A DNA stretch of 64,000 nt from Antechinus flavipes. Lineage: Eukaryota. Shown piece by piece: positions 23,962 through 47,969 of the stretch. Under the pieces are notes generated by a model that did not search any database, was not told the DNA's origin, and saw only the letters and a program-made list of their open reading frames with translations. The stretch is from assembly GCF_016432865.1 (NCBI RefSeq), contig NC_067401.1, positions 110,980,001 to 111,044,000 of the forward strand, read 5' to 3'. The stretch's first letter is position 1. Every line of letters begins with the position of its first letter. A program made the position numbers and the translations under genes.

Positions 23962-25199
23962 GCGGATTCTTTTGTAACCCAGTGTGTGGTGGTCTATTTT
24001 GGGTCGTGTTAACAGTGGTGTGCTGGTAAATTTTTAACAACTGTCTTTCTGGAGGAAAGAAACCACATGCGTGATATACTTTGAAACGTAATCCTTATTA
24101 TTAACATTTTCTCCATCACTAAATTAAATCTAATCTAGATAGACAACAAAATAGTAAATCAAGCCATGATTTGTATTGTTTGCTGATTTTTGAGATGTAA
24201 ATGCTCACAAGGAACATTTAACAACCAATTCTCTTGAGCAGGTATGAGCTGGTTCCAGCATGCCTGTTAGTGAATAATCTTTATCCAAGATGAACAGAGG
24301 ATTCATGTTTTTTTTTTTTTGTTTGTTTTTTATGGCAGATTTTAGTTGCTTTCCTATGTTTGGATTTTGGGTAGATGACTTGGAAGGAACTTGGAAGGTC
24401 ATCTGGCCCAACACCCTCATTCTATAGATAATGGAAACGAGGTCCCTACAATTTAAGTGGTTTCCCCAAGCTCATGTAGTGAGCAATAGAGCTGGGTTTT
24501 AATCCAGATCTGAATTCAGACATGGCTTCTTTGTGACTCTACTGCCTGCATTTTTCTGTGATCTAACAATTGTTCCACCATTTGCTTGCTTTTGACCTTT
24601 CTTTAGCTCAAGCAGTGATTAGCAATCTTCAGCTCAGAAGGATGAGAACATTATAGATTTTGGAAGAGAAACTAGAACACAGTTCCGACCAAGAAAGAGG
24701 CACTGGGATGGGACAGTGAAAGAAATGTCAATAAGATTCTCTCCTTGATAGAGTCTCCTTCCACAAATCAGCCCTTTCTGACTTCTATTTTGTTCCCACT
24801 TCCCATTCTAGCTGAAGAAATAGCCTCATTAACACTTCATCATCCTGTACCTTTGAGACATTTTTTGCTCCATCCCCTCCTAACTCCATCTTTACCTCTA
24901 CATCCTACTCCCCCAACGTTTAGCCAACTTGACAGCTCTAGCCCTCCTTGAGAAGCATTTTGTCCTATTGGATGAAGTGCAAGCTTTGGAATGAGAAAGA
25001 CCTGCTAACAAGCCACTTTTGACAATAGCTTTGATAGCAGGAACAATTCACCTAAGCTATTTCCTCTGTAAGATGGGCATAATAATGCCTACAACATTTA
25101 TCACACATGATAAGTGCAAATGCTTTAGGAACTTTAAAGCAAAATGTAAATCTAAATTATTTATATGGACAGTAATGCAATCCCAATAAACTTTGGATG

Positions 25200-25440
25200 G
25201 AAAATACCATCTGTATCCAGAGAAAAAACTATGGAGACTGAATGTGAATTGACATATATTCACTTCTCCCCACCCCTGTTTCTTCTAGTGTTTTTTTTTT
25301 TCCCTTTCATGATTTTTGTCTTTTGTTTTTACTTTTCTTTCCCAACATGATTCATAAGAAAATATGCAAAAAATTAGAATATATGTATAACAATTTTTTT
25401 TACATGTAACTGGGGAAAACAAATTAAAAAAAAAAAACTT
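25200..25440 (+). mobile_element. Marsupial L1 3'-UTR fragment
   Basis: ccatctgtatccagagaaaaaactatggagactgaatgtgaatt...aaattaaaaaaaaaaaa. Boundaries approximate. Confidence 0.55.
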
Positions 25441-26419
25441 ATATGGACAGTAAAAAAAGTTTGGCAGAAGGGAAGGAGATGAATTTGAATTTGATTCCTG
25501 ATTCAACCCTTTGCTAGCATGTAAACTAGAGCAAGTCACGTCTCTAGATTTGTTTCTCATCGAGGGTAAACTAAAATATCCCTGAGCTTTGGAAAAATTT
25601 GTAAAAAAAAAAAAAAAAAAGACTACATAAAAAAGAACATGAAAATCTGGCTGTGTATGCTCATAGGTTTAGAAAGTCTTATGATACCCATCCCTACTTC
25701 CATCAAATCACTCCTTACTGTCTTCTATATGTGATACATGGTCCTTGTCTCCCAATCAAGAAACGGGGCATTCTTTGAGGTGAGAAATAATTTCTTCTGA
25801 ATCATTCTGTTCTTTCCCGCCCCAAAATGCACACAGCAGTTTACTTAAATTGTGGAGTCAGAAGAAGAAGATGAAAAAAAATTGCCCTGGTTTACATTCA
25901 GAGGAGAACATATTTTATAGGGAAGGGTTGAGAGGAACAATGTTTTGATCGAGAGGGCTTGGATTTTAATCTTGGGCTCACACAACCCAAGTGACCTTTG
26001 TCAAATTACCTATCCCCTCTGTCCTTCAGTTTATAAATTGTTGAAATGGACTGGACATTCTCTAAGAATCCCTTCCAGCTAAGGGTGTGCTGGAACCAAC
26101 TCTTACCTGCCAGAGAGAATTTGTTGCTATACATTTTGAACATGAACATTTGCACCTTGGAAATCAGCAAATATCACAAAGCAGGAGTTGATTTATTGTT
26201 TAAAGTATCCAGACTTAAGAAAGTGAAAGAGAAAATGTTAGTTTTGCAGATTAAACTTAAAAGTGTGTCGAGCACACATCCCAGCCCGCTTGCCTCCATT
26301 TCCAAATCCTGGGGTCTCATGGATTGTGGTTGTGGGAATTCTGCTATTTCCAAGGACTGCCTGCAGAGGGTGCCTAGAACTCATGTTCATCTTGAAGTTG
26401 TCGCTTGAATATCCTTCAA

Positions 26420-26435
26420 CCATCAGGTGGCACTA
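26420..26435 (+). promoter_or_regulatory. Candidate CTCF site
   Basis: CCATCAGGTGGCACTA has one mismatch to the CTCF core. Confidence 0.4.
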
Positions 26436-28822
26436 CTGAGACCCTCAGGAGGGAAGTAATAGCTCCTAGCTACTTCCAGCCCCCAGCTCTAGCCCCCAGC
26501 CCCCAACACACCTTTTTAAAATCTAGACACTATCACTTCCCACTGTCCTCACCTCAGCCAAAAGTCTATAAATAGAAGTTGGAAAAAAAGATGTTTGCAA
26601 CATCAATATGTCATTTCCTAAGAAAGCAGGGAGGAGGAGGAGAAGGGGGCTTAGTGGGAACCCCTCCATGGCTCAGCCTAAAGGGAGGAAAAACTTCTCA
26701 TTATCCTGCCTTCTCTGAGTCTGATGAGACGGGGAGGACCTGCCTGGCATTGCCCATGACATTCTGAGAGGTGAATTTTGTAATTATCCTAAGAGGAGAT
26801 CAAAGGGCTCCGGTCCCTTTCTTTCTCTTCATCCTTGGGCGAGGCTGTTGGGTGTGTTGCCCGGATTCCATCCCACTTAACCCTTACCTATTTCTTGATG
26901 CCTGTGGTGAGGGTGATGGGGGAAGAGACAAGATCTAGGGCTCCCTACATAGGCAGTGAGATGTGTCTCCCCGGGGGCATCATGCCTGCCACAGAGATAA
27001 GCTGGCACCTAGATAGAGCAAGATGTCGTTACCTATTGTATCTCGGGGGTAGGGCGGGGGAGAAAGGCCCTAGAGCAGGTGAAGGCCTAAGCACCTGCCA
27101 CCTGGCTGCGTGGGCAGAGGGTCACCTCATGGCCAGGGATAATGACCCCCTCCTCGGAGATGGGAGCATTTACAAGGCAGTTTGGCGCCAGCCTCTGCCC
27201 TCCACCCGGCATTTCGTGTGCCTGGCTTCAGGGTGCCAGCTTCTGACCCGTCAATTAACACTGGCAGGGGGGTACTCACAAACAGCTCAATCACTATCAT
27301 TAAACCAGGATCATTTCCACAGCCTGGGGAAAGGTGAGAAGGGTCACAGCCCTGACCTCTACTGCCCTATTTCATCCATTTTGTCCCTGCCTTTCCCCAA
27401 GAAGCTGCAAGTTTGTGGCTGGGGGAAGGGAAGGAGAAGGAGGAGATGTCCTCTGCCTCAGAGTACGGAGGGAAACCAGATGTTTCCTCCCTGCCTCCCT
27501 CACACGAGGCTCCGACACCCACCGCCGCCACAGGAAACAGGAGTAAATAATACTCTGGAGAGGTGGCGGGAGAGCGAGGGGGTGGGAGGGAAAAGGGCCT
27601 CTCATTTAGTCAAATCTGGCCGGGAAGGGCAGAGTGAGGGACATGGTGTGATACCCCATGAGGTCAGAGGCATTGTGCCCCTTGTCTGCTGTCCTGGGGC
27701 CGGGGCCGGGGCTGGGAACACCAGCAGGGGACTCGAGGCCGCGGGGGCCCCACGGTGATCCTTGTGGGTCAGGGGCTAAACAGAGGGCTTGAAGGGCCAG
27801 GCAGCCGGCCAAGCATCAGGGCGAAGGGAAGGCATGCCAAAGGGTCAGGACTGGGGAAACAGTGGCTGGAGAGGGGAGAAGGAGGAGGGGGGCTTAGCGC
27901 CAGCCCTTGGCTCCAGCCCTTTCCGGCCCTTATTGTCCTTGGTGAGAACAGGAGAGCGTCCTGTTCTCACTGCCTGCCCACCCCCAGCCCGGCTCCCCAG
28001 GGGCTCGGGAAGGATGTGGGGAAACAAGAGAGAGCCAGAGACATGGAGAGACAGAGACACAGAGAGACTCAAAGACGGAAACAAAGAGAGAAACATTCAG
28101 TCAAAAACACTCATTGAGACCTACTCAGCATAGCTCTGTACTGGGCACTGTGGGAAGGAATTACTGAAAAAGAAGCGGGAGTCCCTCCCCTCTGCAAACT
28201 CCAGCATGGCTTGGGAGGCAAGGCACACACATGCAGGGATTGCAGAGCCCCTACAAAGCAACCTCATTACTAATGAATTTGGTACAGACTAAGTCTACGA
28301 CTGCGGTTGTCAGGAGCCTTGAACTGCGTTTTCTCGAATCAGTCCCCATCTGGAATGCAAGCAACTTGAAGGCAAGTAGCTGCTCAGCAAGTGATTATCG
28401 ATTGACTAACAGCAGTGTGGAGAAATGGATCAAGCATTGCCTCTGGAATCTAGCAGATCTGGATTCAAATTCCAAGTTGTGACTTTGGATAGGTCACTTA
28501 ATCTCTGAATTTATTTCCTACTCTGTAAAATAAATGATCTCTCTAAATTTCCTTCCAATTCCAAATTTTGTGATGATATAAAGAAAAATAAGAGGTATAA
28601 GCAGGAACTAGACTATTAGAATAATGTTTTTAAATGCACAAAATAAAACATATAGGATTTCAGAAGAAACTGATTTTATTGAAATAAAGTTGTTGTTTTT
28701 CCTATCCAAGTTTAGTGACACCTTCCTGCCCCCAAAATCTCTTTGAATTTCTAGATTATAACTCTTGCCCTAATTCTCCAGGTAAGGAGGGGTTGACATC
28801 CAAGAAAGATCTTAAATCTTAC

Positions 28823-29615
28823 ACTAATGTGTTATTGCTGGAGTTGTGAAATGATTCAACTGTTCTGGAGAGCAATTTGGAATTATGCCCAAAGGGCTAT
28901 CAAAATGTGCATGCCTTTTGATCCAGCAGTGTTTCTATTGGGATTATATCCCAAAGAGATCTTAAAGGAGGGAAAGGAACCCACATGTGCAAAAATGTTT
29001 GTGGCGGCCCTTCTTGTAGTGGCCAGAAACAGGAAACTGAGTGGATGCCCATCAATTGGAGAATAGCTGAATAAATTATGGTATATGAATGTTATGGAAT
29101 ATTATTGTTCTGTAAGAAACAATCAGCAGGATGATTTTAGAAAGGCTGGAGAGTTACATGAACTGATGTTGAATGAAGTGACAAGAACCAACAGAAAACA
29201 TTGTACACAGTAACAAGATTATGTGATGATCAACTGTGATGGATTTGGCTCTTTTCAACAATGTGGTTATTCAAGGCAATTCCAATAGACTTGTGATGGA
29301 GAGAACCACTCCCATACTCTATAGAGGACTATGGAGACTGAGTGTGGATCAAAACATAGTATTTTCTCTCACCTTTTTTTGCTGTTCTTGTTTTTCTTTC
29401 TCATAGTTTTTCCCTTTTGATCTGATTTTTGTTGCACAACATAAAGAATATAGAAATATATTTAGAAGAATTGTGCATGTTTAATCTATATTGGATTGCT
29501 TGCTGTCTTGTGGAGGAGGGAAGGAGAAAAATTTGGAACATAAAATTTTGCAAAGGTATATGTTGAAAACTATCTTTGTAGGTGTTTAGAAAAATAAAAT
29601 ACTATTGAAAAAAAT
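28823..29615 (+). mobile_element. 5'-truncated marsupial L1 (ORF2 end plus 3' UTR)
   Basis: Decayed ORF2 C-terminus (CYCWSCEMIQLFWRAIWNYAQRAIK...) then 3' UTR, aaaataaaat and an A-rich tail. Confidence 0.85.
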
Positions 29616-30004
29616 AAGACAACAATGAAGTTTGCTACAACACACAAAAATCTTCAGTCCTGATTCCTGGGCCCTCTGAAGAAGGGCATCACTCTGTCTA
29701 GGGAAAATCTGCAGCGAGAAGAGACATGGTCCAGGATTCCCCCCAGGTAATGGGTCTTATTCACTAGTTCAATTTCCTTTACAGAATTCCCCTCTTCTCA
29801 AGGAGTGTTCTTCCCTTTGGACTTTTGCTATGAAATCTATTCTCTACTCTTCAAAAATCAGTGGCCTAGTTCTAAAGTAGTCAGTTTTTCTGGAGTATAT
29901 TAGAGCAAGGGGTTCTTGGAAACCTGACTAGACTCTAACAAGTAATGTATCTTGTATGTGTGTGAGTTTGTATGAGAGAGTGTATGTGTGTGAGTGGAGT
30001 ACCT

Positions 30005-30172
30005 ATCACTAACTATGTGACCCTGGGCAAATCACTTAACCGTGTTTGCCTCAGTTTCCTTATCTGTAAAATGAACTGGAGAAGGAAATGTCAGACTACT
30101 CCAATATCTTTGCCAAGAAAATCCCAAATGGGGTCTTGAAAGGTTGTACCTAATTGAAATAATTGAACAACA
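30005..30172 (+). mobile_element. Mar1-type SINE (MIR core plus RTE-derived tail)
   Basis: tgaccctgggcaaatcacttaacc...ggagaaggaaatg...ctccaatatctttgccaagaaaatcccaaatgggg...gaacaaca. Confidence 0.75.
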
Positions 30173-31510
30173 TCACTTGGGAAATGACTGAGCAAATTGT
30201 GGTACATGAAATGAATGGAATAGTAAATTATTGTTAGAAATAACAAAAGGGACAGATTTAGAGAAACTTGGGCAGATTTGTACAAACTAATACAGAATGC
30301 AGGAGAACAATTATTATCACAACTCATAAAGTTATCCAGCTTTAGGGGAAAAAAAAACTTTGAAAGACTTAAAAATTCTGATCATGTAATGGCTAATGAC
30401 AAAACATACCTCCCATCTCTTAACAGAAGTGATGAAGTTATTTAAAAATTAAGAAAAACAAAACAAAACAAAAACAGAGGTGATGGATCAAAGGTTTAGA
30501 GTGAGACATTACATAATTGCTATCATTGCTTTATAGGTCTTTAAGGTTTGCAAAGCATTTTACATAATGTTATCTGATTTGATCCTCACAACAACCCTTT
30601 GAGGGAGGTACTATTATTATCTCCATTTTATAAGCAAGTCAAATCAACAAGCATTTATTAAGCACCAAGTATGTACCAAGTACTACACTAAGCCCTGCGG
30701 ATATGAAGAAAGACAAAAAATAATTCCTGAAATCAAGAAGCCCACATTCTAATGATGAAAGACAACATGGGAACACCTATATAACAACAAGATAGTTGCA
30801 GGATAAATTGAAGATAATTTTAGAGGAAGGAAAAAAGGAAGGAAGCATCTATTAAATACCTACTTTATTCTAGGCATTGTGCCAAGAGCTTTACAAATAC
30901 TAAATCATTGGATGCCCACAACAACTCTGTGAGGTAAAGTACTATTATTATCTCCTTTATACAGTCGGGGAAACTGAGGCAAACAGTAATTAAGAGACTC
31001 ACTCAAGGTTATATACATCTATGTAAGTGTCCCAGGTCGGACTCAGAGCTTCCACTCTATCTTTTGTCACCTAGATGTTAACAGTAAAAAGGACTAGGAA
31101 AAACTTGCAGAAGGTAGTTTTAGCTAAACTGTATGGGAAGTCAGGTAGCAGAAATGACGAGGGAGAGAATTACAGGCATGAGGGACGGCCAGGAAAAATA
31201 AAGAGGAAACTGAGGGTGAATGACTAAATGATTTTCTCAGGGCTAAATAGGTAAGATGTGTTTAAATCAGTATTGGAACTCAGGTCTTCAACCACCAAGT
31301 CCCATACACTGTCTACTGACACTTTTAGACATAGTTTATGTGTGAATTTGTTTTGCTTGACTATTTAAATATAACCCTACATTGCTATAGAATTGAGAGA
31401 TCCTCAAGTAGATGCTATCCCACAAATTCACCATTTAGTGACATTTTGGAACTGGGATCCCTAGAAGAGATTGGTGTTGATTTATGGAAGGAAATAAATT
31501 TAAAAAAAAA

Positions 31511-32155
31511 GAATGGAAGGATCAGTTGAGGCAGAATAAGCTTAGCAAGACGATAGATGCATACTAAAGGCATGGATGGGATGTGTGATGTGCCTGAGGT
31601 ACAACTCATAGAATCCATGTCACTAACTCAATACCATTCTGGGAAAAATTTAGGATGATGGTTCCCCTGTAACAGAAGCCCTTCAAAACTATCTTGAAGG
31701 ACTACTAGTGATCAATACATCACCTCAGAGTCCAGTAACCTTATGCTTCACCAATGGTGGAAAGACCAAAGAATGGGAAGAAAGAATTGGGTGTAGACTA
31801 TGGGAGGGCTTTGAACAGAAGAACTGTAATAGAACAGTATGACCTGCTTGGGGTTGCCTCGGACCCTCTCTTAGGTAGTCTGTGGTACTCAGTCTTGGAT
31901 TTACATGGTGAATGACAGTAGATGCCTACGGCTGAGATGATGGACAAGAAGACTATTTTCATCTTCCCAGTTTGAGTTTACTTTTCCAGTATATGCTCCC
32001 AGGGTATGTGGGGACAACTGGCATTTCCTAATGGTGATGAAAAAGTAGTCAATGAAGAAAACTACTTGAAAGCATTATAGTACCTCAATGAAGACATTAT
32101 CTTTGGAAAGACACTTGAAAGATGTGAGGAGAGAATGATGAAAACATTAAATTAG
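31511..32155 (+). mobile_element. Fossil Ty3/Gypsy LTR-retrotransposon pol (reverse transcriptase) fragment
   Basis: Manual translation through stops and about 3 frameshifts gives EWKDQLRQ..HGWDV*CA*GTTHRIHVTNSIPFWEKFR..PYASPMVERPKNGKKELGVDYGRALNRRTV..GSLWYSVLDL..KKTIFIFP..SQGM..YLNEDIIFGKTLERCEERMMKTL. These motifs are collinear with Gypsy RT. Confidence 0.85.
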
Positions 32156-33863
32156 CGTGGTGGTGATTGCTCCAGGACAATTTCAGCCTGAATCTCTTCC
32201 AAAGATATAAGAAAAATGAGATGATAATAAGTATATAATAATATAAAATAAATATTATAGCAATAGCTGACATTTATATGGAGATTCAAGGCCTGCAAAG
32301 CATTTTATATACATTGTTTCATTTGAGACTCACACAATCCCCGTGAGGTGGGTATTGTGGCCCTTATAAATCCCATTCTACAGGTGATGAAATGAACATC
32401 TGAAGAAGTAAAGTGAGTCATCACACAGTTGCTAAGTATGCAGTTGGGCATCAAATCCAGAATTCTGACTCTGAGTCTAGTAAGTACTTTCTTTTAAAAA
32501 TTAAAATTCTTTTATTTTCTGCTCTGAATTCTTTCCCTTCCATCTTCCTAAGAAAGGACTTTTCCTTGCACCACATTGTCTGCAAATCTATCATCCTAAG
32601 AGTAGCTGATCTCCAAGGTATCTTTCATCTCTAACCACTTTATGACTCTATAACTTTATTAACAACAGACTCGGTTTATTGTGTTTCTTTCCTGAAACCT
32701 ACCCTGATCCTCCTGTTGCTGGCACTCCCTTCCCTTTATATATCCCTCCAAGACCTTGAAAATATCTCTGAAAGGATCAGATGATTTTCTCAAGTACACA
32801 AAACTTATTTTTGTGTCCTTCCTTACTTAACCTTTCTGTTGCATTTCATCCTTTTTCTCTTTCCATCTAAGAGTAAGGCAAACTCTTTTTAGGAAATCTT
32901 CCCTAAATCATCCTAATTATTTTTTTCAACAAATAATCTCTGAACTACCTTTTTTTCATCACAGCACTTCTGTAGTGTTACAATTACGTATTCGTGTTGA
33001 TTATATGGGTGCTTGTTTTGTTTTGTTTTGTTTTCTCCACTAAAAACTGTAAGTTTCCTTTGGCCAGGGATAGGTACAATTCATTATCTGATACTTCCCC
33101 TCAGGGACCCACTAAACTGCCATGCAATTAGTTGCCCTTAAAAAAAAGAATAGAAGTGACATATGGTCCTACAAGAATATGAACAGATATAGTACAGGGA
33201 AGAGGAAGGTCCCCTTACCTGGATCAGAAGTGGAAGAAAAGAAATAAGCATTTATATAGCACCTAGAATGTGCCAGATACTATGCTAAGCACTTTATAAA
33301 ATTATCTCTTTTGACCTTCATTATAATCCTGGTAGGTAGGGCTTTAGGAAGGGAGAAAGTATATAGAACTTCCCTGCCTGCTCACCCCTCTCCCTTAAAC
33401 CCATGTACTTTTAATATGTCTTTGATAAAGAAATTACTAAATTAACTCAGAGATCCTACTACTGATACTGAAGTTATTAGCAGCAATAGAAGATTCATAC
33501 TTGTAGAAATATCACAGCAGCTTCATTTGTGATAACAAAAAGAAGCAAAATATTTGTCCACAATGGGGGACTGCTTTAACAAATTGTGGTAAATGAATGC
33601 AATGGAATCTTATCATTCTTGACAGAATGACAAATATGAGGAATTCATAAGAAACAGGATGATGTGATTCAAAAAAAGCAGAGGAAAAATCCCAAAATAG
33701 TTAATGCCCAGAGTAATAGAAAAAGAATCAACAGAGAAGCAATAAAATTTGGTCAATTACAACAGTCTGGGTTAGTATCAGTGTTAGTCCAATATTGTAA
33801 AAGTTAAAGGACAAATTCCTCATTTCTGTTAACGGTTAATAAACTTTTCATGGCTGTACTTTG

Positions 33864-34141
33864 TGTTGTTGTTCAGTCATTTTATAGTCTTGTCTGACTC
33901 TTCATGACCCCATTTGGGATTTTCTTGGCAGAGATGCAACAGTAGTTTACCATTTCTTCATTTTCTGGTTCATTTTACAGATGAGAAAACTGAGGCAAAC
34001 AGAGTTAAGTGACTTGTCCTGGATCATATAGCTAGGAATCAAATACTAGGAAGTATTTGAGGGCAGATGTGAATGCAGGAAGCTGAGTCTTTGTGATTCC
34101 AGGCCTAATGCTCTAACCAGTATGACATCACCTATTTGCCC
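33864..34141 (-). mobile_element. Near full-length Mar1-type SINE
   Basis: tgttgttgttcagtcattt...catttgggattttcttggcagagat...ttttacagatgagaaaactgaggcaaac...cctatttgccc. Confidence 0.8.
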
Positions 34142-36079
34142 CTATGTACTTTGTAGTGGAGTTTATTTAGGTGTTGTTGGGAAATTACTGTTGTATCAAT
34201 ACATTTTTAAAAACCAATGCAAGAGATCCTTGATAAAGCTGATAAAATACCTCTCATAGCAATCGGACTTTTATAAGATCCTAATAAGAAGATCTTCAGA
34301 AATCCCTGGAAATTCCCTATAATATATCTAAAATTATATTCCCTAGGCATCTGAATCTGATAACTCTGGGAGTTCCCAAGATTCAATCCTTTACCTCCTA
34401 CCCTTTTCATATCTTTTTTTTAAAAACCCTTTTTAAAAAAAACTTTTCCTGCCCTTTCATTATACTCTGCTTCAAAGATTATACTCATTCCCATGGCTTT
34501 GACTACCATGTCTATGTGAGTATCCAGGCCTGCATCTCAAATTACTTAGTTGGCATTTTCAAGTGGATGTCCCAACATGACCTCAGATTCAATATGTCCA
34601 AAATCAAAGTGACTGTCTTACTCCCTGAGTCAGCCCTCCTGACATACCTCCCTGTCTGTCAATAGCACCATCAGCATCTAGTCATTCAAGTTGGAAAAAT
34701 TAAGTCATCTTTAATTCTTCCTTTTTCTCCTCCTCACTCTATTCCCATGCCTAATCAGCCATAGGATCATCAAATCCTCTCAATATTTTCCTTTGAAAAG
34801 CATAAGTAATTATACACCTCCATGAAGGCAGGGGCCATGACTTATTTAAACCTTTGTGGTGTCCTTCATTACTTAGCACAGTGAACTGCACACTTGAGGC
34901 ACTTGGTGTATATTTGTTGAATAATTGGATGAATGAATGAATTTTGTTATATATCTCTTCCTCTTCATTTCTCCTGGAACCACTAGCATACTGGCTCTCA
35001 TCACATCTTGTTCAAATTTGTTCATCAGCATCCTTACGGGCCATCTTTCTCATCTCTCACTCACACCTATCTGCACAAATCTCCAGAATAACCAATAAAC
35101 ATTGCTTTCTGTGTCTAAAAAGAAGAAAAATAAGAAGAAATTCCCACTTTACCTCTTGGCAGAGGAGAAACATCTACAAGGGTTGCAAATTACACCTATT
35201 TTGAGACTTTGTCAATATATTAATCAATTATGATGATATTTTTCTTTTCTTTTAAAAACTACCATGTATACTATTTGTATTAATGGATGGTTCTTTGGAG
35301 AAGGAAGAGGAAAGGGTTTTTTTGTTTTTTTTTTTTTAAAGAGGAAAGTTTCTAAAGGAAATTATGATGATACTTTTAAACTCCTCAATAAAAACTAATT
35401 TAAAAAAATTTTACTTTTCCCCTGCCACTCCCTGGCTCAAAGAGCCCCATTTTTCTACTGCAACAAGTTTAAAATCCTCTGCTTGACTTTCTAGGATCTC
35501 CCACCACTTCTCATACACACTCTTTGATCTTATCAGCCTGGTCTCCTCTGTGGACCTTGAACACAACGTAATTGATTTGTGCCTTCCTTTATATTGTTCC
35601 CATCACCTGGGATGCTCTCCACTCTTTGTTTTTCTAAATCCTAGTCATCCTCCAAGACCTAGTTCAAGTCTTTCCATAACGCCTTCTCTGAATGCTCTAG
35701 CCCTAGATGATCTTAGACTCAGGATTCAGGACTCAAGACTCACCATAGTGTGCCTCACAATTAGTCTCTAATTATAGATTGCCCAGTCTTTTATTGCTCA
35801 TGACTGATTCATGTGTGGCGACACTATCTTCCCAAATGAAATGCAAACTCCTTGAGGTCAAGTCCTAGATCTTTGATTTTCCTTGTAGCCTCCATAATGG
35901 AGTCATGGATACTCAAAAAAATATCTGCTTATTGTTCACCAGAATAGGATATGTTCTGTTCTATAGTTATTAACCATTTTAAGGGATCTGTCATCTCATT
36001 GATGTGGGGGTTCCCCCCCATCATAGTTACATTCCATCTATATATTCCATTCTTGTCCATGCCCTGCTATAAATCCTAT

Positions 36080-37262
36080 AGAAAGGATATGCCATCGTAT
36101 GAAAAATGTTCCAAATCACTAATAGTTACAGAAATACAAATCAAAATAATTCAGAGGTTTCATTTTATAGCCGTAAATTTACAAAATGACAACAGTAAAT
36201 ATTGGGAAGGTTGTGGAGGAATAGCCACATTAATATATTGTTCATAGAGCTATAAAAAAATCATTTTGGAAAGTAATTTGGAATTATGCAAATAAAGCAA
36301 TTAATATGTCTATAGCTTTTGAGTCAGAAATTCTGTTACTGGGCTTTTATCCCAAAGATTAAGAAAAAGCCCCCAATGCTCCAAAATATTTAAAACAGTA
36401 CTTTTTTGGGGATAGCTAAGATTTGGACACAAAGTAGATTGTCCCATCATGGTAAATGGTTAAACCAATTGTGGTACATGCATGTAAAAGAATATTACTG
36501 GACTGTTAAAAATGATGTATGTGATGAATACAGAGAAGCATGGAAAGATTTATACAAACTGATGTAGAGTGAAATAAGCAGAGCCAACAGTTCCAATAGT
36601 CTTGTAATGAAGAGAGCCATCTACACCCAGAGACAGGATTGTGGAAACTGAGTTTGGATCACAACATTGCATTTTCACTCTTTTTGTTGTTATTTGCTTG
36701 AATTTTGTTTTCTTTCTCATTTTTTTCCTTTTTGATCTGATTTTTCTTGTGCAGCAAGATAATTGTGTAAATATGCATACATATATTAGATTATATATAC
36801 ACGTTTAACATAGATTACTTGCTATCTATCTAGAGAAGGGGACGGATTTGGAACACAGGGTTTTGCAAGGGTCAATATTGAAAAATTATCCATGCATATG
36901 TTTTGAAAATAAAGAGATTTAATTTAAAAAAAAAAAGAAAAAAGCAGGATCAAATAAACAATAACTACAACTATGTAAATAAAAAAACCACATATACATA
37001 TAAAATCAAAATTAAATTTAACAAAAATTAAATTTAAGAAAATTATAAAGAAGCAAGTAGGAATCAAATTAAAAGAGATGAGAATACATCCCCCACCTAC
37101 CCCTTTGTGGAAGTGGGAATTCCTCATTATATATGTTTTCAGCCTTTTTCAGTTTATTAAAAATGCTGACTTTTTTTCTTTTCTTAAAAAAAATTGGTCA
37201 TATGGAAAGGAGAGGTAGAAACAGCTATGATGATATTAAAAATAGAAAATATCAATAAAAAT
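36080..37262 (+). mobile_element. Old L1-like 3' region interrupted by a younger L1 3' end (about 36591-36935)
   Basis: L1 ORF2-end/3'-UTR motifs on both sides. The inner segment ttccaatagtcttgtaatgaagagagccatc...aataaagagatttaattt(A)n has the younger-type 3' end. Confidence 0.65.
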
Positions 37263-37282
37263 TTATTTTTTATAAAAAGAAA

Positions 37283-37440
37283 AGGAGCAACTAGATGGTG
37301 CAGTGGTTAGAGCACCAGCCCTGAAGTCAGAAGGACCTGAATTTAAATCCGTTCTTAACACGGACTAGCTGTGTGATCTTGGGCAAGTCACTTAATTCCA
37401 ATTGCCTCACCAATTTAAAAAAAAGAAAAGAAAAGAAAAA
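37283..37440 (+). mobile_element. WSINE1-like short SINE
   Basis: ggagcaactagatggtgcagtggttagagcaccagccctgaagtcagaaggacctgaattt...gggcaagtcacttaattccaattgcctc plus an A-rich tail. Confidence 0.75.
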
Positions 37441-39639
37441 ATAGGCACATCATGCTAAAAATTTTCCTCTAGGTCTTTTAACATTACCTGTATTGTTGGG
37501 GAGTCCTTACTCAGACTTGCTTTGGTAGTTCACATATAGAATATTTAACAGAAAACTAAAAAAGGTTTACTAAGCCATGCCTGGAAGGGATATTTAATAG
37601 AGATACAGCAATTGACTCAGGTAGACATGCCTTTTCCCACACACATATGAGTCTGGTCGTCGGGACAGTTAGAATATGTTGACTCCTTTGTCTGTGGAAT
37701 ATTTACCAAGTCTGGAGAATACTGATTTCATGTAGGTTTGCCTCTTTGATGACCCTAGGCCGCCAGACAGCTAAGCTAAAGCCATAAGCCTTATCTACCT
37801 GGGTCATTAAGTCTCATGGACATTTTCCATTCCTTTTAGAGAAAATATAATTAGCCTAGATTAAGGTACAGATTTCTCCTACCACAGCTAGATACCAATA
37901 CAGCACTTAGATTATCTAAATGTTATTCTTTACTCTTAACACATGACCAGCTCATCTCCTTTTCCAATTGTACATTTTCTAGATGTGACCTTTTATTCCA
38001 TTTTTTAATATGAATCATCTTTCTACTCAACTTCACATCACAGTCTAGACAAAAACATTCCTCATCCATTTGGCTTTTCCTATGTGAATTGTTAGGCTTT
38101 ATGGAGAGAGGTGACACCTGAACTTAGCCTTGAAAGAAGAAAAGTGTTTTAATGGGGGTAATGAGGGTGGAGTACATTACATGCATGGGAGATGGATTGT
38201 AAGAGGGCACAGAGGCTAGATTGTCCATGAAGACAAAGCCTATTCTTAATTTCTTCTATCTCCCCTGGTGAACAGACTTTTATACATAGCCGGTATTTAA
38301 TAAATGCTGAACAAATGTTGTTGTGAATGAATACTACTGCCATCTAGAAGACATGGTAGAAAACAGCATTAGCCTGGGAAACCTGAACTGAATAAGGTTC
38401 TGAGTCAAAGGTCCCCCCCTCTTCTCACGCCTCCTCCCCAAATCCCTGCGCTGATCTCCACCTGACTCAGAGGCTCAAGCACTCCCTGAGCCTGCCTGAG
38501 TAAGACAAAACAAAGGATGCAGTTTAATATAGAGGAATTGGAGCCTAAATTTATTCTCCAAATGATAGTGTCCCCTGCCCAGTCTCCTTGTGATCCAGAA
38601 GTATAAAAAGGTAAAAATGATGAGGAAAGAGATACATATGTGAAGAGTAGGAAAGGAAAGGGAAGCAGAGAAAAAAGTGATTGAAGCAGAAGGAAAAAAA
38701 AAAAATGGACAAGATGAAGCCCAAGCATGTGTCCACTTGAAACCTACAAAAGAAAATGAGGAGAAATAGTTCTTAAAGGTCCTTTCTGGCTCTAAAATGC
38801 TAGGATTATGAGATTTCAGCCTCCAAAAAAGGCTCCCACTGCTTTAGTAAGTATTGCTTATCCCCTTCACATGAATTGTACTGAAACATTGCTTTGCTTA
38901 TATCCCTTCCTTGCTTCAAAAATCTTTGAGGCTTCCCCTCACTTAAGTATAAAATTCATATGTCTCAGTGTGGTGTTCAAGACTTTTCACAGTCTTCATG
39001 GTACTCCAGTCAAGTTGGGTTATTCTTCCTTTCCCAAATAAACCTGGAATAGCCTTCTTCACCCTACCTCTTCCAATCCAATTTATCCTTTCAAATCTAC
39101 CTTGTATCTTAGCTCCTCCATGAATCTTGACAAATCATGATAGCTACATAATGCTAGGCTCTGCTAGGAATACTACAGAATACAGACCATATAGAATTTA
39201 CTTCTCCTAACCCTTTCTATATTGTTCAATGACCATTCATTGCTACTCTTGGATTGTTACCTAACTTTTTTTTCTTTATTTTTTAATACATATTGCTTTA
39301 TGAATCATGTTGGGAAATAAAAATCAGAACAAAAGAGAAAAGCCATGGGAGATAAAAAAAAATAGAAAAAAGAAGTGAACCTATATAGCATGTGTTGATT
39401 TATATTCAATCTCCATAGTACTTTTTCTGGATGCAGATGGCATTTTCTATCCAATCTACTGGAATTACTTTGGAGTTACCTAACTCTTGAACTGAGTGAT
39501 GTACTTGAGAGTTAGAAGATGTAGGGATCACAGGATTTAGACCTGGAAAGAACTTTAGAGATCACCTAGTCCAGGCCCTTTGTTTTGCAGATGAAGAAAA
39601 TTGGTTATACAGCATAGGAAAGCTAGTAGCATAGTTTTC

Positions 39640-40930
39640 ATGAAATGCAAACACCTTAGCTATTTGGAGTAAGGACTCACTATTTGATAAAAACTATTGG
39701 GAAAACTGGAAAAAAATGTGGCAAAAATTAGATTTATACCACAAGATAAGTTATGCCAAAATGAATATGGTATAGATATAAAAGATGACAGCATAAACAA
39801 ATTAGAGAAGCAAGGGGGAAAAATATCTTTCATAAGTATGAGTAGGAGAAGAATTTATGACCAGCAAATGACAGAGAAAATCAGGGGAAAATTGTACAAC
39901 TTTGATTATGTAAAATTAAAAGTTTTTGCACAAATTAAAACAACTCAGAAGTACCACTTCACATGTATCAGGGTGTGACAAAATATGACCAAAGAAAAAG
40001 GAAAATATTGGATGTTGGAGGGAATGTGAAAAAAACAGGGACACTAATGCATTGTTGCTAGAGTTGTGAAATGATCCAACTATTCTGGAGAGCAATTTGG
40101 AACTATGACCAAAAGGCTGTAAAACTGTGTATACTCTAGGGGGCAGCTAGATGGGAAAGTAGATAGAAGACAAGCCCTCAAATCAGAATGACCTGAATTC
40201 AAATACTGCCACAGACACTTAACATTTACTATCAGTGTGACCCTGGGCAAATCACTTAAACCTAATTGCCTCACCAAAAATTAAAATGCCAAAAAGAAAA
40301 AAAAAACCTGCATATTCTTTGATCTACCAATACCACTGCTAGATCTCTATCCAAAGACACACCCACAAAGGGAAAAAGATCTAGTTGTACTTTTTGTGGC
40401 AGCTAATAATTGAAAATCAAAGGGATATCCATCAATTGGAGAGTGGTTAAACAAGCTATGATATATAATTATAATGGAATTTTTTTGCTTTAAGAAATGA
40501 CAAGCAGGATGATTTCAGGAAAACCTGGAAAGACTCACATGAACTGAATCATGGTGAAATGAACAGAATCAGGAGTACATAGAACACAATAATAGCAATA
40601 TTGTTTGATGAAGAATTGTGACTTAGCTATTCTCAGCAACACAATGATCCAAGATTAATGATAAAGCATACCACCTGCCTCCAGAAAAAGAACTGATATT
40701 GATTGAGTATGCTGACTGAGCATGCTATTTTTTCACTTTCTTTCATTTTTTCCTTATTCTAGTTTTCTTGTGTAAAATGACTAATATGAAAATGTTTTAC
40801 ATTGTTACACATAATATAACTTATATCCAATGCTTACTGTTTTAGCCAGTGAAGAAAAGGAGAGAAGAAGGAACAGAATTTAGAACTCAAAATTTAAATG
40901 AAAATATCTTAAAAATTGGAAAAACAACAA
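39640..40930 (+). mobile_element. Decayed L1 3' portion containing a nested SINE
   Basis: ORF2 remnants (gggaaaactgg...ggagagcaatttggaactatg...ccatcaattggagagtgg) and 3' UTR. Confidence 0.75.
40138..40302 (+). mobile_element. WSINE1-like SINE inserted into L1
   Basis: gggcagctagatgg...tgaccctgggcaaatcacttaaacctaattgcctc plus A tail. Degenerate TSD aaaactgtgtatactct / aaaacctgcatattct. Confidence 0.75.
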
Positions 40931-41379
40931 CAAAAATAAAAAAAGGAAAATCAGCAAAACTGATTAACATATTGAAATTTTCAGGAAATATGTCCAATGT
41001 ATGACATTTGTTAGAAAATTTTTGAATAACCAAATACTAAATTTCGCTTACAGATTGGGGAGAGTAAACATGAAATTTTTTATCCCTTGTTACTGGCCAT
41101 CCTTTATGCCTACAATACTCTTTGGCTTTACCTTTACCCATCTACTAGTTTCCTTTAAGAATTCAAATTTCATCTCCTGAAAATTTTTTCTAATCTCTTC
41201 CACCCATCTCTCCAACCTTCCACTATAGTCTTCTGAGATTATCTTCTATTAGTACCTAGTTATTTACAAGTTGTCTCCACCATTAGAAGGTGAATTCTTT
41301 GGAGGAAGGGGCCATATTTTTGCTTTTCTTTGCATTTCCAATGCCTGACATAGTAAGAGCTTACTAAATGCTTGTGGAG

Positions 41380-41790
41380 AGCAGGATGCTTTCAGGAAAA
41401 ACATGGTAAAACTTACACAAATTGATATAAAGTGAAAATAACAGAACCAAAAGAACATTGTAAACAGTTATAGCAACATTATATGATGATTAACTGTGAA
41501 TGACTTAGCTATTCTCAGCAATATAATAACTAAGACAATATTGCAGGATTTGAGACTGTCTACCTAAAGAGAAAGAAGTGATGGAGTCTGAATGCATTTT
41601 GAAATATATTTTTTAACTTTATTTTTCTTGGGATTTTTTCTTTTTTTTTTTTCACAATATAGAAATATGTTTTGCATGATTGCACATGCACAATCATATC
41701 AAATTGCTTTCCTTTTCAATATGAGGAGGGTGAGGGGAGAAGGAGGGAAAGAATTTAGAATTCAAAAATGTAAAAAATGATGGTTAAAAA
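41380..41790 (+). mobile_element. Old L1 3'-UTR fragment
   Basis: gcaggatgctttcaggaaaa...gacttagctattctcagcaat...gagaaggagggaaagaatttagaattcaaaa. Confidence 0.6.
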
Positions 41791-42993
41791 TAGTTTAAAA
41801 TATTGAAGACTTTAACAAATTCTATGTGTAACCAGAAAAAATATTTGAGAAAAATATAAATGCTTATTGACTGCCCATCAAAAATAATTACCTGTTATAC
41901 TGTATTATTTCATAAAATTGTTGTGAAAATAAAATGAGATATTTTTAACAGTAAAGTAACTTATAAATGTGTTACATAAGCATGTACAAATATAAACTAT
42001 TAATAATAAAATATTATTATTATTACTTGTCTTTCATGTGTCTTTGTCTTGACTCCTTGTCTCCTTAATTAGGTTGTAAACTCCTTAAGGGCACAGACTC
42101 TGCCTCACTTCTCTGTGTACCTGTTGTGGGCCAAGATACTTTTGGATTTAGGGAATCAGAATTAACTACTACTCTCCCACAACACCAGCCAGAATTATTG
42201 TGAACACAAAAGCTATGGTGCAGATCTGGAGCAATTTGAGTTGACTGGGCCATCAGGTGGATGGATTTGACACCCACCTGGAGACCTTTTGATCAAGAAG
42301 AATATTAATGTATTTTTAGGATTTTGGAAGGAGGATCCAGAGAACTTCCTAGCCAGTAATTTTCATAGTGTGTAGCTATATATCTATATTTTCATGTATG
42401 CATATGTATACACACATAGATATGCTCTCTCTATACAGATATGTACACACATACATACATATACACACATACACACACATATAATAGAAATTGAGAATTT
42501 GAACTCCCAGGCATGAACAACTGTAAGTAGGACAATAGTCTATAGAGTTCTTGGCATAGTATTGGACACAGAGTAGGTACTCAGTTTTACCTTTAATCAA
42601 CAGGTATTATTTGTCAGAATGAAATCCTGATTTTAGCTATTTCCTTCTGGGTTGGTAATGACTTAGACCTCATAGGATTCATATCTCACACTATTAGAAT
42701 ATATGGTTTTTGGTTAGTTATACTGTGTATTTCATATTCCCTAATAATAATAATAATATCTGACATTTATATAGTCCCAACATCATCCCTCTGCTATATA
42801 TATCTCTTAGCAGAGAACCTCAATCAGAACCTTGAATCAGAAAATAGAGAGCATTTTCAATGAGAACTCTCTTTTCCCCACTTGTATATTTTAAAGGCCC
42901 TAGTCATCAGGAAGTGTTCCCTCTGCCATTACTCTTGTCTTTGTTGAAGAGATTGTCTTTCTCCTCACCAAGACCAGCATCTAGACTTGTACT

Positions 42994-43914: not shown

Positions 43915-44520
43915 CTGATTTCATTGTCTCCCAAAATTAGCTTGCTCCCAGAACCATTTGCCTTCTCCCATCAATCATTCCCATCATTCTCTGTTCTATC
44001 CTACCTTAATGCCTATAAATAATTTTATGTCTTCCCATCTTTGAAGAAAAATTCTTCCTTGATCCTACTGTCTTCTCAAACTATGATACTTTGTCTCTCT
44101 GAGTGGGGAGTATGCATGTGTGTGTAAAGAGGGAATAGACCAGAGATTTGAAAGCTAAAATCAGTAAGTCTTGGCAACAGCTTGGACATGGTGGGATGAG
44201 AGACTGAGGAACCCAGGATGGAATTCCTAGGCCGGAAACCTGAGGGTCCGGGAGGAGAATGTTAACCTCTACCATAATAGAGAAAGGAAGAAGGGAGTGA
44301 TTAGGGGAAAGAATAATTAGTTCTGTTTTGGACCTACCTAGAGTTCTATGGGACATGCAGATATGTCAGACTGGAAATCAGAAGAGAGATAGGAAAGGGA
44401 GACCTGAGAATCCTCAGCATAGAGATGGTAGATAATTAAATCCATAGGGACAATGAGATTACCAAGTGAAGAGGAAAGGGCCCAGGAGAATGCTGAGGAA
44501 CACCTTCAGAGGCCGTAATT
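43915..44520. mobile_element. L2 fragments
   Basis: L2-like cttgatcctactgtc... and ggaggagaatgttaacctctaccataatagagaaagg...ggagaatgctgagg. Boundaries approximate. Confidence 0.45.
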
Positions 44521-44629
44521 TGAAAGAGGATCTGGCAAAGGAGAAGGCAGGTATATATTCCATATGGGTTTGTGCAAGTTACATATGTTTATGTATATGT
44601 GCATATGTGTAGATAGTGCATGTTGTTTT

Positions 44630-44759
44630 NNNNNNNNNNNNNNNNNNNNNNNNNNNNNNNNNNNNNNNNNNNNNNNNNNNNNNNNNNNNNNNNNNNNNNN
44701 NNNNNNNNNNNNNNNNNNNNNNNNNNNNNNNNNNNNNNNNNNNNNNNNNNNNNNNNNNN
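44630..44759. other. Assembly gap (130 N)
   Basis: Run of N directly before the AT-rich satellite. Confidence 1.
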
Positions 44760-46940
44760 GGTTATATATAGTTATATTTATCTATATATGGTTATATATG
44801 TAGTTATATTTATATATGGTTATATATGTAGTTATATTTATCTATATATGGTTATATATATAGTTATATTTATCTATATATGGTTATATATGTAGTTATA
44901 TTTATCTATATATGGTTATATATATAGTTATATTTATCTATATATGGTTATATATATAGTTATATTTATCTATATATGGTTATATATGTAGTTATATTTA
45001 TATATGGTTATATATGTAGTTATATTTATCTATATATGGTTATATATATAGTTATATTTATCTATATATGGTTATATATGTAGTTATATTTATCTATATA
45101 TGGTTATATATGTAGTTATATTTATCTATATATGGTTATATATATAGTTATATTTATCTATATATGGTTATATATGTAGTTATATTTATATATGGTTATA
45201 TATGTAGTTATATTTATCTATATATGGTTATATATGTAGTTATATTTATCTATATATGGTTATATATGTAGTTATATTTATCTATATATGGTTATATATA
45301 TAGTTATATTTATCTATATATGGTTATATATATAGTTATATTTATCTATATATGGTTATATATGTAGTTATATTTATATATGGTTATATATGTAGTTATA
45401 TTTATCTATATATGGTTATATATGTAGTTATATTTATCTATATATGGTTATATATGTAGTTATATTTATATATGGTTATATATGTAGTTATATTTATCTA
45501 TATATGGTTATATATATAGTTATATTTATCTATATATGGTTATATATGTAGTTATATTTATCTATATATGGTTATATATGTAGTTATATTTATCTATATA
45601 TGGTTATATATGTAGTTATATTTATCTATATATGGTTATATATGTAGTTATATTTATCTATATATGGTTATATATGTAGTTATATTTATCTATATATGGT
45701 TATATATGTAGTTATATTTATCTATATATGGTTATATATGTAGTTATATTTATCTATATATGGTTATATATGTAGTTATATTTATCTATATATGGTTATA
45801 TATGTAGTTATATTTATCTATATATGGTTATATATGTAGTTATATTTATCTACATATGGTTATATATATAGTTATATTTATCTATATATGGTTATATATA
45901 TAGTTATATTTATCTATATATGGTTATATATAGTTATATTTATCTATATATGGTTATATATGTAGTTATATTTATATATGGTTATATATGTAGTTATATT
46001 TATCTATATATGGTTATATATATAGTTATATTTATCTATATATGGTTATATATAGTTATATTTATCTATATATGGTTATATATGTAGTTATATTTATATA
46101 TGGTTATATATGTAGTTATATTTATCTATATATGGTTATATATATAGTTATATTTATCTATATATGGTTATATATGTAGTTATATTTATCTATATATGGT
46201 TATATATGTAGTTATATTTATCTATATATGGTTATATATGTAGTTATATTTATCTATATATGGTTATATATGTAGTTATATTTATCTATATATGGTTATA
46301 TATGTAGTTATATTTATCTATATATGGTTATATATATAGTTATATTTATCTACATATGGTTATATATATAGTTATATTTATCTATATATGGTTATATATA
46401 TAGTTATATTTATCTATATATGGTTATATATAGTTATATTTATCTATATATGGTTATATATGTAGTTATATTTATATATGGTTATATATGTAGTTATATT
46501 TATCTATATATGGTTATATATATAGTTATATTTATCTATATATGGTTATATATAGTTATATTTATCTATATATGGTTATATATGTAGTTATATTTATATA
46601 TGGTTATATATGTAGTTATATTTATCTATATATGGTTATATATATAGTTTATTTATCTATATATGGTTATATATGTAGTTATATTTATCTATATATGGTT
46701 ATATATGTAGTTATATTTATCTATATATGGTTATATATGTAGTTATATTTATCTATATATGGTTATATATGTAGTTATATTTATCTATATATGGTTATAT
46801 ATGTAGTTATATTATCTATATATGGTTATATATGTAGTTATATTTATCTATATATGGTTATATATGTAGTTATATTTATCTATATATGGTTATATATAGT
46901 TGTATTTATATGGTTATACATATATATAAGGTTATATATA
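44760..46940. repeat. AT-rich 32-bp satellite/minisatellite, about 65-70 copies
   Basis: Unit GGTTATATATGTAGTTATATTTATCTATATAT with 30-bp and 28-bp deletion variants. Confidence 0.97.
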
Positions 46941-47329: not shown

Positions 47330-47690
47330 GCGACGTAGAGAAAAATGGCAGAGATGAAGGAGAGCTCTCTGTACCGCGTCTCAGCAGGCCTCACGGAAAC
47401 CCCGTGAAAAAACTACAAGTCCCATGAAGCCTCACAGGTAGCGGCGCATGCGCGGAGGGCTCGGCTTTCCTGGTTGGATTTACAGCCTCGGTAGAGAATT
47501 GTGGAAGGGGATTTCCTTTCTTACCCGCGATAGGAGTTGCGAGGTGAGGGGAAAGGGGTTTGTGGGTGAAGGGCTGGGGAGCGCAGCCGGAAGGGGGGGG
47601 GAGGCGGAGGCGGGGGGAGAGGGGCGCCCCGCGGCCCCCGCGGCTGCGCTGCTCACTGCAGCCGCACTTCCTTCCTCCCCACCAGGGACC
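47330..47690 (+). promoter_or_regulatory. DPM3: DPM3 CpG promoter, non-coding exon 1 and 142-nt 5'-UTR intron
   Basis: ZNF143/THAP11 motif AACTACAAGTCCCATG at 47411-47426; NRF1 GCGCATGCGC at 47444-47453; donor GAG|gtgagg at 47544; acceptor ccaccag| at 47685. Confidence 0.75.
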
Positions 47691-47969
47691 ATGACCAAGC
47701 TGGGCCAGTGGATGTCCACGCTGCTGGCGCTGATGCTCATCTGGCTGTGTCTGGTGCAGGACCTGCTCAACCTGGGATATAGTCAAAAAGTCCACGATGT
47801 GCTAGTGCCCTTGCCCGTCTACCTGCTGGTCACCGCGGGCAGCTACAGTCTGGCCACCCTGGGCTTGCGCCTGGCCAGCTTCAATGACTGCGAGGAAGCA
47901 GCCCAAGAACTGTTCCTGCAGATCCAGGAAGCCCAGGCTGATCTGGCCAGCAAGGGCCTCAAACTGTGA
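47691..47969 (+). CDS. DPM3: Dolichol-phosphate mannosyltransferase subunit 3, 92 aa, single coding exon
   Basis: MTKLGQW...PLPVYLLVTAGSYSLATLGLRLASFNDCEEAAQELFLQIQEAQADLASKGLKL: two TM helices plus a C-terminal coiled coil. Kozak accATG; ATTAAA at 48006-48011; syntenic position. Confidence 0.93.
   Translation: MTKLGQWMSTLLALMLIWLCLVQDLLNLGYSQKVHDVLVPLPVYLLVTAGSYSLATLGLRLASFNDCEEAAQELFLQIQEAQADLASKGLKL

What the first reader, a model, noticed from the sequence alone, without database searches (positions are those of the whole stretch)
31511..32155. Fossil Ty3/Gypsy reverse transcriptase hidden in intergenic DNA
Reading through stops gives EWKDQLRQNKLS..HGWDV*CA*GTTHRIHVTNSIPFWEKFRMMVP / EALQNYLEGLL / ITSESSN / PYASPMVERPKNGKKELGVDYGRALNRRTVIEQY..GSLWYSVLDL..Q*MP..DKKTIFIFP..SQGM..EKVV..YLNEDIIFGKTLERCEERMMKTL. 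This is collinear with Gypsy RT motifs (SPYASP, KKNG, CVDYR.LNRRT, FSVLDL, KTAFI.P, MPQG, YLDD..IFGKTLEEH.ERL). A single frame runs 31739-32155, and the catalytic YLDD has decayed to YLNE (32081-32092). Active Gypsy elements are extinct in mammals but gave rise to PEG10, RTL and PNMA genes. The MPQG-type RT suggests, by inference, the clade with PNMA-like gag. A marsupial pol fossil could help reconstruct that source lineage. No LTRs were recognised, and homology may extend upstream to about 31380.
Basis: partly seen in the sequence, partly recalled or inferred. Interest (0 to 1): 0.75.

Follow-up and report, generated by a model that had tools for sequence, protein, structure and literature searches.

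The report
Dead Gypsy reverse-transcriptase fragment in marsupial
This is a real but ordinary relic: about 760 bases of the reverse-transcriptase gene of an ancient Gypsy-type jumping element, broken by stops and frameshifts, lying in non-coding DNA of a marsupial genome.

Summary
Window 31390-32152 (+) aligns with Ty3/Gypsy (Metaviridae) pol proteins of turtles, frogs and fishes. tblastn gives E 1e-33, and a profile built from those proteins gives 4e-38. The aligned part runs from the linker before the reverse transcriptase (RT) to about 20 residues past the YXDD motif.

The frame is dead. It carries 8 in-frame stops and 4 frameshifts, and it reads YLNE where YLDD should be. CpG observed/expected is 0.10. 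Nothing else of the element is in the 64 kb: no gag, protease, RNase H, integrase or LTR pair.

The tree joins the fossil to sea-turtle elements, but the identity margin is thin (43.6% against 41%).

Stop density suggests about 0.2-0.25 neutral substitutions per site. That is roughly 100 million years, with a range of about 30-240.

Fragmentary Gypsy fossils in mammals are already described and are in Repbase (MamGyp-int and others). This scan also noted four more Gypsy fossils on other DNA of the same genome.

Verdict: a genuine fossil, a new member of a known kind, of low interest.

The parts
31390..31738 (+). Decayed coding remnant of the linker before the RT and the first RT residues, matching turtle P0003 residues 187 to about 296. 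It holds 4 in-frame stops (31478, 31565, 31586, 31595) and 4 frameshifts (at 31451/31452, 31660, 31704 and 31736/31739).
   Evidence: Frameshift-aware alignment; tblastn.
31739..32152 (+). Decayed RT fingers and palm in one frame, matching P0003 residues about 297-436 and about the first 170 of 205 positions of Pfam RVT_1. It holds 4 in-frame stops (31913, 31919, 31973, 32078). Homology stops abruptly at 32152, before the end of the RT domain.
   Evidence: The RVT_1 span of P0003 is 304-464.
32081..32092 (+). Position of the catalytic YXDD motif, which reads YLNE here.
   Evidence: Sequence. It aligns to YLDD of P0003 and P0005.

Best explanation
Window 31390-32152 (+) is a non-functional 763-bp remnant of the pol gene of an ancient LTR retrotransposon of the Ty3/Gypsy (Metaviridae) group. 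It belongs to the vertebrate lineage whose living members in turtles, frogs and fishes carry a PNMA-type gag; the literature calls this the Barthez or Gypsy12_DR-like lineage. By inference, an element copy integrated in the germ line of an ancestor of this marsupial. It then lost all selection and accumulated about 0.2-0.25 substitutions per site plus small indels. Deletions and later insertions removed the rest of the element, so only the linker before the RT and the RT fingers and palm remain recognisable. It encodes nothing today. Shown here: the homology, its extent, the breaks, the absence of other element parts in the window, and the clade of the nearest relatives. Inferred: the mode of arrival, neutral decay, and an age of roughly 100 million years (range about 30-240).
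For: A library-wide HMMER search with the 58-residue piece found five full-length matches to vertebrate pol proteins, at 56-62% identity over 56 residues. These proteins carry RVT_1, RT_RNaseH and integrase, and P0005 and P0008 also carry PNMA. tblastn of these proteins hits the window only at 31451-32152, with E down to 1.4e-33. The frameshift-aware alignment covers 31390-32152 with 105 of 246 residues identical, 8 stops and 4 frameshifts. A pol profile finds one segment only, at i-Evalue 4.4e-38. The best 120 of 2109 relatives of the Xenopus RT are from fish, frogs, turtles and a ray, and most carry PNMA and PNMA_N gag domains. The closest relative, turtle P0142, has PNMA gag, RT, RNase H and integrase, and the fossil maps to about its residues 609-858 of 1827. 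In the tree the fossil sits inside the vertebrate clade, separated from an arthropod and a plant element at 100/97 support, and with the turtle elements at 97/100. YLDD has become YLNE. CpG observed/expected is 0.10, and stop density gives K of about 0.2-0.25.
Against: The uninterrupted pieces alone give no Pfam or PDB hit. No gag, LTR or other part of the element is present, so the clade is assigned from the RT alone. The tree had only two outgroups and no other vertebrate Gypsy clade (Sushi/chromovirus, Gmr1, Cigr2, Mag, Osvaldo). The fossil's branch reached the program's upper limit. Its identity edge for turtles is small (43.6% against 41.4%), and it shares only 3 of 28 turtle-specific residues. 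The age rests on an assumed neutral rate and on eight events.
Confidence: 0.92

Rival explanations
1. It is the dead remnant of a once-domesticated, single-copy, pol-containing host gene rather than an ordinary transposon copy.
For: No LTRs or other element parts surround it. Domesticated Gypsy genes that keep pol parts exist in mammals, for example PEG10 and RTL1 (PMC11011659).
Against: The known pol-retaining domesticated genes come from the Sushi/chromovirus lineage, not the PNMA-gag lineage (PMC3670739). Marsupial PNMA-MS1 and PNMA-MS2 lack pol (PMC3789554). The frame has 8 stops and 4 frameshifts and lacks both ends of the RT. The scan noted four other scattered Gypsy fossils in this genome (unchecked), which fits a dispersed repeat.
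Confidence: 0.04
2. The fragment is a dead coding sequence but has been exapted as non-coding regulatory DNA for the neighbouring genes in the TRIM46 to DPM3 interval.
For: There is no direct evidence. Ancient repeats that stay recognisable for this long are sometimes conserved non-coding elements (general point in PMC5753468).
Against: The decay pattern, with stops, frameshifts and CpG observed/expected of 0.10, fits neutral evolution. Conservation and chromatin data could not be obtained.
Confidence: 0.04
3. It is a reverse transcriptase of another kind (endogenous retrovirus, DIRS or LINE), or a chance resemblance.
For: Single pieces give no Pfam or PDB hit.
Against: E-values of 1e-33 and 4e-38 rule out chance. 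In a search of 1.84 billion representative proteins, the only full-length significant matches were Metaviridae pol proteins. No retroviral or LINE protein appeared.
Confidence: 0.01

Closest known systems
Active PNMA-gag metaviruses of sauropsids, amphibians and fishes. Here: the sea-turtle element P0142 (Caretta caretta, a cluster of 417 sequences) and the Xenopus 'Gypsy retrotransposon integrase-like protein 1' proteins. In the literature: Gypsy-30_Ami, Gypsy12_DR and the Barthez clade.
   Same: The RT sequence is collinear over about 250 residues with 35-44% identity, and every RT motif is in the same order.
   Different: Those elements are full-length, open and multi-copy, with gag, RT, RNase H and integrase. 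The fossil is 14% of such a polyprotein, carries 12 breaks, has no YXDD and has no LTRs.
Mammalian Gypsy fossils in Repbase and RepeatMasker: MamGyp-int with the MamGypLTR families, and X1_LR to X4_LR (PMC5753468). MamGyp-int is the stated source of PNMA2 (bioRxiv 10.1101/2023.02.09.527862).
   Same: The same kind of object: ancient, fragmentary Gypsy remains in a mammalian genome, linked to the PNMA lineage.
   Different: Whether this fragment matches any of those consensus sequences at the DNA level could not be tested, because no Dfam or Repbase library is on hand. Those families were defined mainly on eutherian genomes.
Marsupial PNMA-MS1 and PNMA-MS2 and the gag remnants in tammar and opossum (PMC3789554).
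   Same: They derive from the same broad metavirus lineage in marsupials. Most of the reported hits are short, broken remnants.
   Different: Those are gag-derived, and PNMA-MS1 is an intact expressed gene. This fragment is pol-derived, dead, and has no gag beside it.

Membership tests
Ty3/Gypsy (Metaviridae) reverse transcriptase | Significant homology to an RVT_1-type RT domain, with the RT motifs in order | tested here: met
   It aligns to residues 187-436 of P0003, whose RVT_1 domain is 304-464. The profile i-Evalue is 4.4e-38. Direct Pfam scans of the unbroken pieces found nothing.
Ty3/Gypsy (Metaviridae) reverse transcriptase | Nearest relatives are elements with the domain order RT, RNase H, integrase (Gypsy order), not retroviruses, Copia or LINEs | tested here: met
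   The fossil itself keeps only the RT part, so its own domain order cannot be seen.
Ty3/Gypsy (Metaviridae) reverse transcriptase | Flanking long terminal repeats, and gag, protease, RNase H and integrase in the same copy | tested here: not met
   There is no LTR-like direct repeat pair in 24000-42000. No other pol or gag segment appears in any of six frames of the 64-kb window. This is expected for a truncated fossil.
Functional reverse transcriptase | Open frame and the catalytic YXDD motif | tested here: not met
   There are 8 stops and 4 frameshifts, YLNE stands in place of YLDD, and the RT C-terminus is missing.
Vertebrate PNMA-gag (Barthez or Gypsy12_DR-like) metavirus clade | The RT groups with elements that carry PNMA and PNMA_N gag domains | tested here: met
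   The top relatives carry PF14893 and PF20846. The tree puts the fossil inside this clade at 100/97 against arthropod and plant outgroups.
Vertebrate PNMA-gag (Barthez or Gypsy12_DR-like) metavirus clade | Exclusion from the other vertebrate Gypsy clades (Sushi/chromovirus, Gmr1, Cigr2, Mag, Osvaldo) | tested here: inconclusive
   No members of those clades were in the tree. The only support is that none of them appeared among the significant hits of the library-wide search.
Vertebrate PNMA-gag (Barthez or Gypsy12_DR-like) metavirus clade | The copy's own gag is of PNMA type | tested here: not met
   No gag remnant was detected anywhere in the window. The feature is lost, so it says nothing about the original element.
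MamGyp-int or another Repbase/Dfam Gypsy family | Nucleotide match to the family consensus | not testable with these tools

The most novel reading that the evidence does not exclude
The fragment may be a trace of a wave of PNMA-type metavirus activity in the marsupial lineage after its split from placental mammals. That would be the same wave that produced the marsupial-only gene PNMA-MS1. It would mean this lineage stayed active in early metatherians longer than the 'only fossils in mammals' view assumes, and it would be the first pol-level evidence for that source element.
Probability: 0.25. Interest if true: 0.4.

Novelty: new member of a known kind. Interest (0 to 1): 0.2.

Why it matters
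The finding adds little on its own. [quoted passage not shown] It could become useful in a genome-wide census of such pieces. Dating them by orthology across marsupials, monotremes and placentals would show when this lineage stopped transposing in mammals. It would also show whether marsupials and placentals took their PNMA genes from the same wave of elements or from separate waves.

Tried and rejected
- **Pfam on pieces:** scans of eight stop-free pieces found no RT family.
- **PDB on a piece:** a sequence search with the 58-residue piece found only a chance designed-repeat protein, E 1.4.
- **Word search for short relatives:** no hits for the 58-residue piece among proteins of 32-101 residues, so no called ORFs from other copies or orthologues.
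- **Two spurious library hits:** P0001 (E 5e-22) and P0007 are translations of tandem repeats. Both have skewed composition and repeated units, with no RT domain. P0002 is a plant protein with tandem RT copies, so its score is inflated by multiple stretches.
- **A possible integrase:** a weak tblastn match of P0008's integrase region at 27114-27557 (E 0.1) lies in a GC-rich 307-codon ORF with no family and a junk-like translation. I rejected it as chance.
- **Repeats in the flanks:** self-comparison of 30400-33600 against the window found only short SINE- or LINE-like matches and no second copy of the fossil.
- **Rfam:** no RNA family anywhere in the window.

Full report
**Observation**

In frame +2 the stretch 31481-32152 reads as an RT-like protein interrupted by stops. 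The frame from 31739 to 32152 is continuous apart from four in-frame stops, and YLNE sits at 32081-32092. The stop-free pieces are too short and too decayed to be recognised alone. Eight of them gave no RT family in Pfam, and the longest (58 residues, 31739-31912) gave no meaningful PDB match.

**Is it more than chance?**

It is. I searched the 58-residue piece with HMMER against 1.84 billion representative proteins.
- Five long proteins (P0003, P0004, P0005, P0006, P0008) matched over 56 residues at 56-62% identity.
- Pfam shows these five carry RVT_1. Of them, P0004, P0005, P0006 and P0008 also have RNase H, P0004 and P0008 have integrase, and P0005 and P0008 have a PNMA gag.
- Their sources are sea turtles, Xenopus and fish.
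- Two higher-scoring hits (P0001, P0007) are translations of tandem repeats and are irrelevant.

Using these natural proteins as tblastn queries against the window gave one locus only, 31451-32152. The best result was E 1.4e-33 and 39.5% identity over 238 residues, for turtle P0003. A profile built from ten of the proteins was searched against all six frames of the window, with X at every stop. It also gave a single segment, 31496-32152, at i-Evalue 4.4e-38.

**Anatomy**

A frameshift-aware alignment of P0003 to 31100-32500 places P0003 residues 187-436 on window 31390-32152, with 105 of 246 aligned residues identical.
- In-frame stops lie at 31478, 31565, 31586, 31595, 31913, 31919, 31973 and 32078.
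- Frameshifts lie at 31451/31452, 31660, 31704 and 31736/31739.

RVT_1 spans 304-464 in P0003. The fossil therefore covers about 115 residues of the linker before the RT and about the first 170 of 205 RVT_1 positions, ending about 20 residues after the YXDD site. On the closest full-length relative it corresponds to about residues 609-858 of 1827. That relative is P0142 from Caretta caretta, a cluster of 417 sequences, with PNMA gag at 51-203, RT at 726-886, RNase H at 978-1107 and integrase at 1265-1431.

Nothing else of the element is detectable in the 64 kb, and no LTR-like repeat pair flanks it. By eye, SINE-like sequence lies on both sides, at about 31130-31325 and 32255-32490. This rests on my own knowledge of MIR-type SINEs and was not tested.

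**Context**

Earlier notes of the scan place MUC1 and TRIM46 in the first 20 kb and call the genome a dasyurid marsupial. I confirmed DPM3 at 47448-47969. The fossil lies in the AT-rich stretch between them (GC 0.35-0.37). In other mammals a small gene, KRTCAP2, lies between these two (my own knowledge). I did not map it, so an intronic position is not formally excluded.

**What it is and how it got there**

It is a dead fragment of a Ty3/Gypsy pol gene. The steps that are shown are homology, extent, breaks and isolation. The inferred history is ordinary:
1. An element copy integrated in the germ line.
2. The copy lost all selection.
3. It decayed by substitutions and small indels.
4. Deletion and later insertions removed the rest of the element.

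The fragment has CpG observed/expected of 0.10. From the codons now present, eight stops correspond to about 0.20-0.25 substitutions per site, with a Poisson range of 0.08-0.48. The protein comparison gives a similar figure. The fossil is 44% identical to the turtle RT, while intact members of the clade are 60-74% identical to it. With an assumed neutral rate of 2-3e-9 per site per year (my own knowledge, not measured here), the age is near 100 million years, with a range of about 30-240. This cannot decide whether the insertion came before or after the marsupial-placental split.

**Clade**

Most carry PNMA and PNMA_N gag domains.

I built a maximum-likelihood tree of 35 RT segments, with the fossil read through with X at each break.
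- The fossil falls inside this vertebrate clade, separated from an arthropod and a plant element at 100/97 support.
- It joins the sea-turtle elements at 97/100.

I give the turtle link only moderate weight, for three reasons:
- The fossil's branch reached the program's upper limit.
- Its identity to turtles is only slightly higher than to other members (43.6% against 41.4%).
- It shares 3 of 28 turtle-specific residues.

Other vertebrate Gypsy clades were not in the tree. The argument against them is indirect: none appeared among the significant hits of the library-wide search.

**Comparison with what is known**

- Kokosar and Kordis (PMC3670739) assign the PNMA genes to the Barthez lineage. 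They state that mammals keep only rare, highly fragmented Metaviridae fossils, while reptiles keep full-length elements.
- Repbase lists MamGyp-int, its LTRs and X1_LR to X4_LR as human Gypsy remains (PMC5753468).
- MamGyp-int is named as the source of PNMA2 (bioRxiv 10.1101/2023.02.09.527862).
- Iwasaki et al. (PMC3789554) found 20 and 14 Gypsy12_DR gag hits in tammar and opossum, mostly short remnants, and PNMA-MS1 as a marsupial-only gene without pol.
- Henriques et al. (PMC11011659) show that metaviruses with the PNMA-type N-terminal domain are still active in reptiles, amphibians and fishes.
- This scan noted four other Gypsy fossils on other DNA of the same genome (unchecked).

The fragment is thus one more member of a described kind. 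Whether an existing Dfam consensus covers it could not be tested.

**Limits**

As a result orthology in other species, copy number in this genome, expression, and the gag ORFs of relatives without a PNMA hit were not examined.

**Verdict**

This is a genuine but ordinary molecular fossil of low interest.

Noticed in passing
window 32255-32490 and about 31130-31325: By eye, SINE-like sequence of the MIR type lies about 100 bp downstream and about 65 bp upstream of the fossil. These insertions or their remnants may mark where the rest of the element was lost. The call rests on my own knowledge and was not tested against a library.
   Followed up: no
window 30009-30140 and 33901-34035: An inverted pair of SINE-like copies, about 135 nt and 82% complementary, brackets the fossil at about 1.3-1.8 kb on either side. 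Further copies of the same core lie at 37364-37409 and 40228-40273. These are probably independent SINE insertions, not element termini.
   Followed up: partly
window 47448-47969 (+): This ORF has a full DPM3 domain in its residues 82-172 (Pfam E 1e-28). The first 81 codons are a GC-rich, Gly/Ala-rich in-frame extension, so the real start is probably the internal Met.
   Followed up: partly
window 26835-27758 (+): A 307-codon ORF in a GC-rich island (GC 0.53) has no Pfam family and a junk-like translation. It is probably a CpG-island or promoter region rather than a gene. A weak integrase-like tblastn match there (E 0.1) was judged to be chance.
   Followed up: partly
window 28821-28957, 36264-36358, 40041-40177: Three diverged copies (61-86% identity) of the same interspersed repeat segment, probably LINE-derived, lie around the fossil.
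   Followed up: no
window 44630-44759: A run of 130 N (assembly gap or mask) sits inside a very AT-rich stretch (GC 0.22 for 44001-46000). I left it untouched.
   Followed up: no
proteins P0008, P0080 and P0087 (database records, not the window): The same fish-type Gypsy polyproteins carry two organism names in the source databases, Oreochromis niloticus and Mustela putorius furo. This looks like a labelling or contamination problem, not a mammalian Gypsy element.
   Followed up: no
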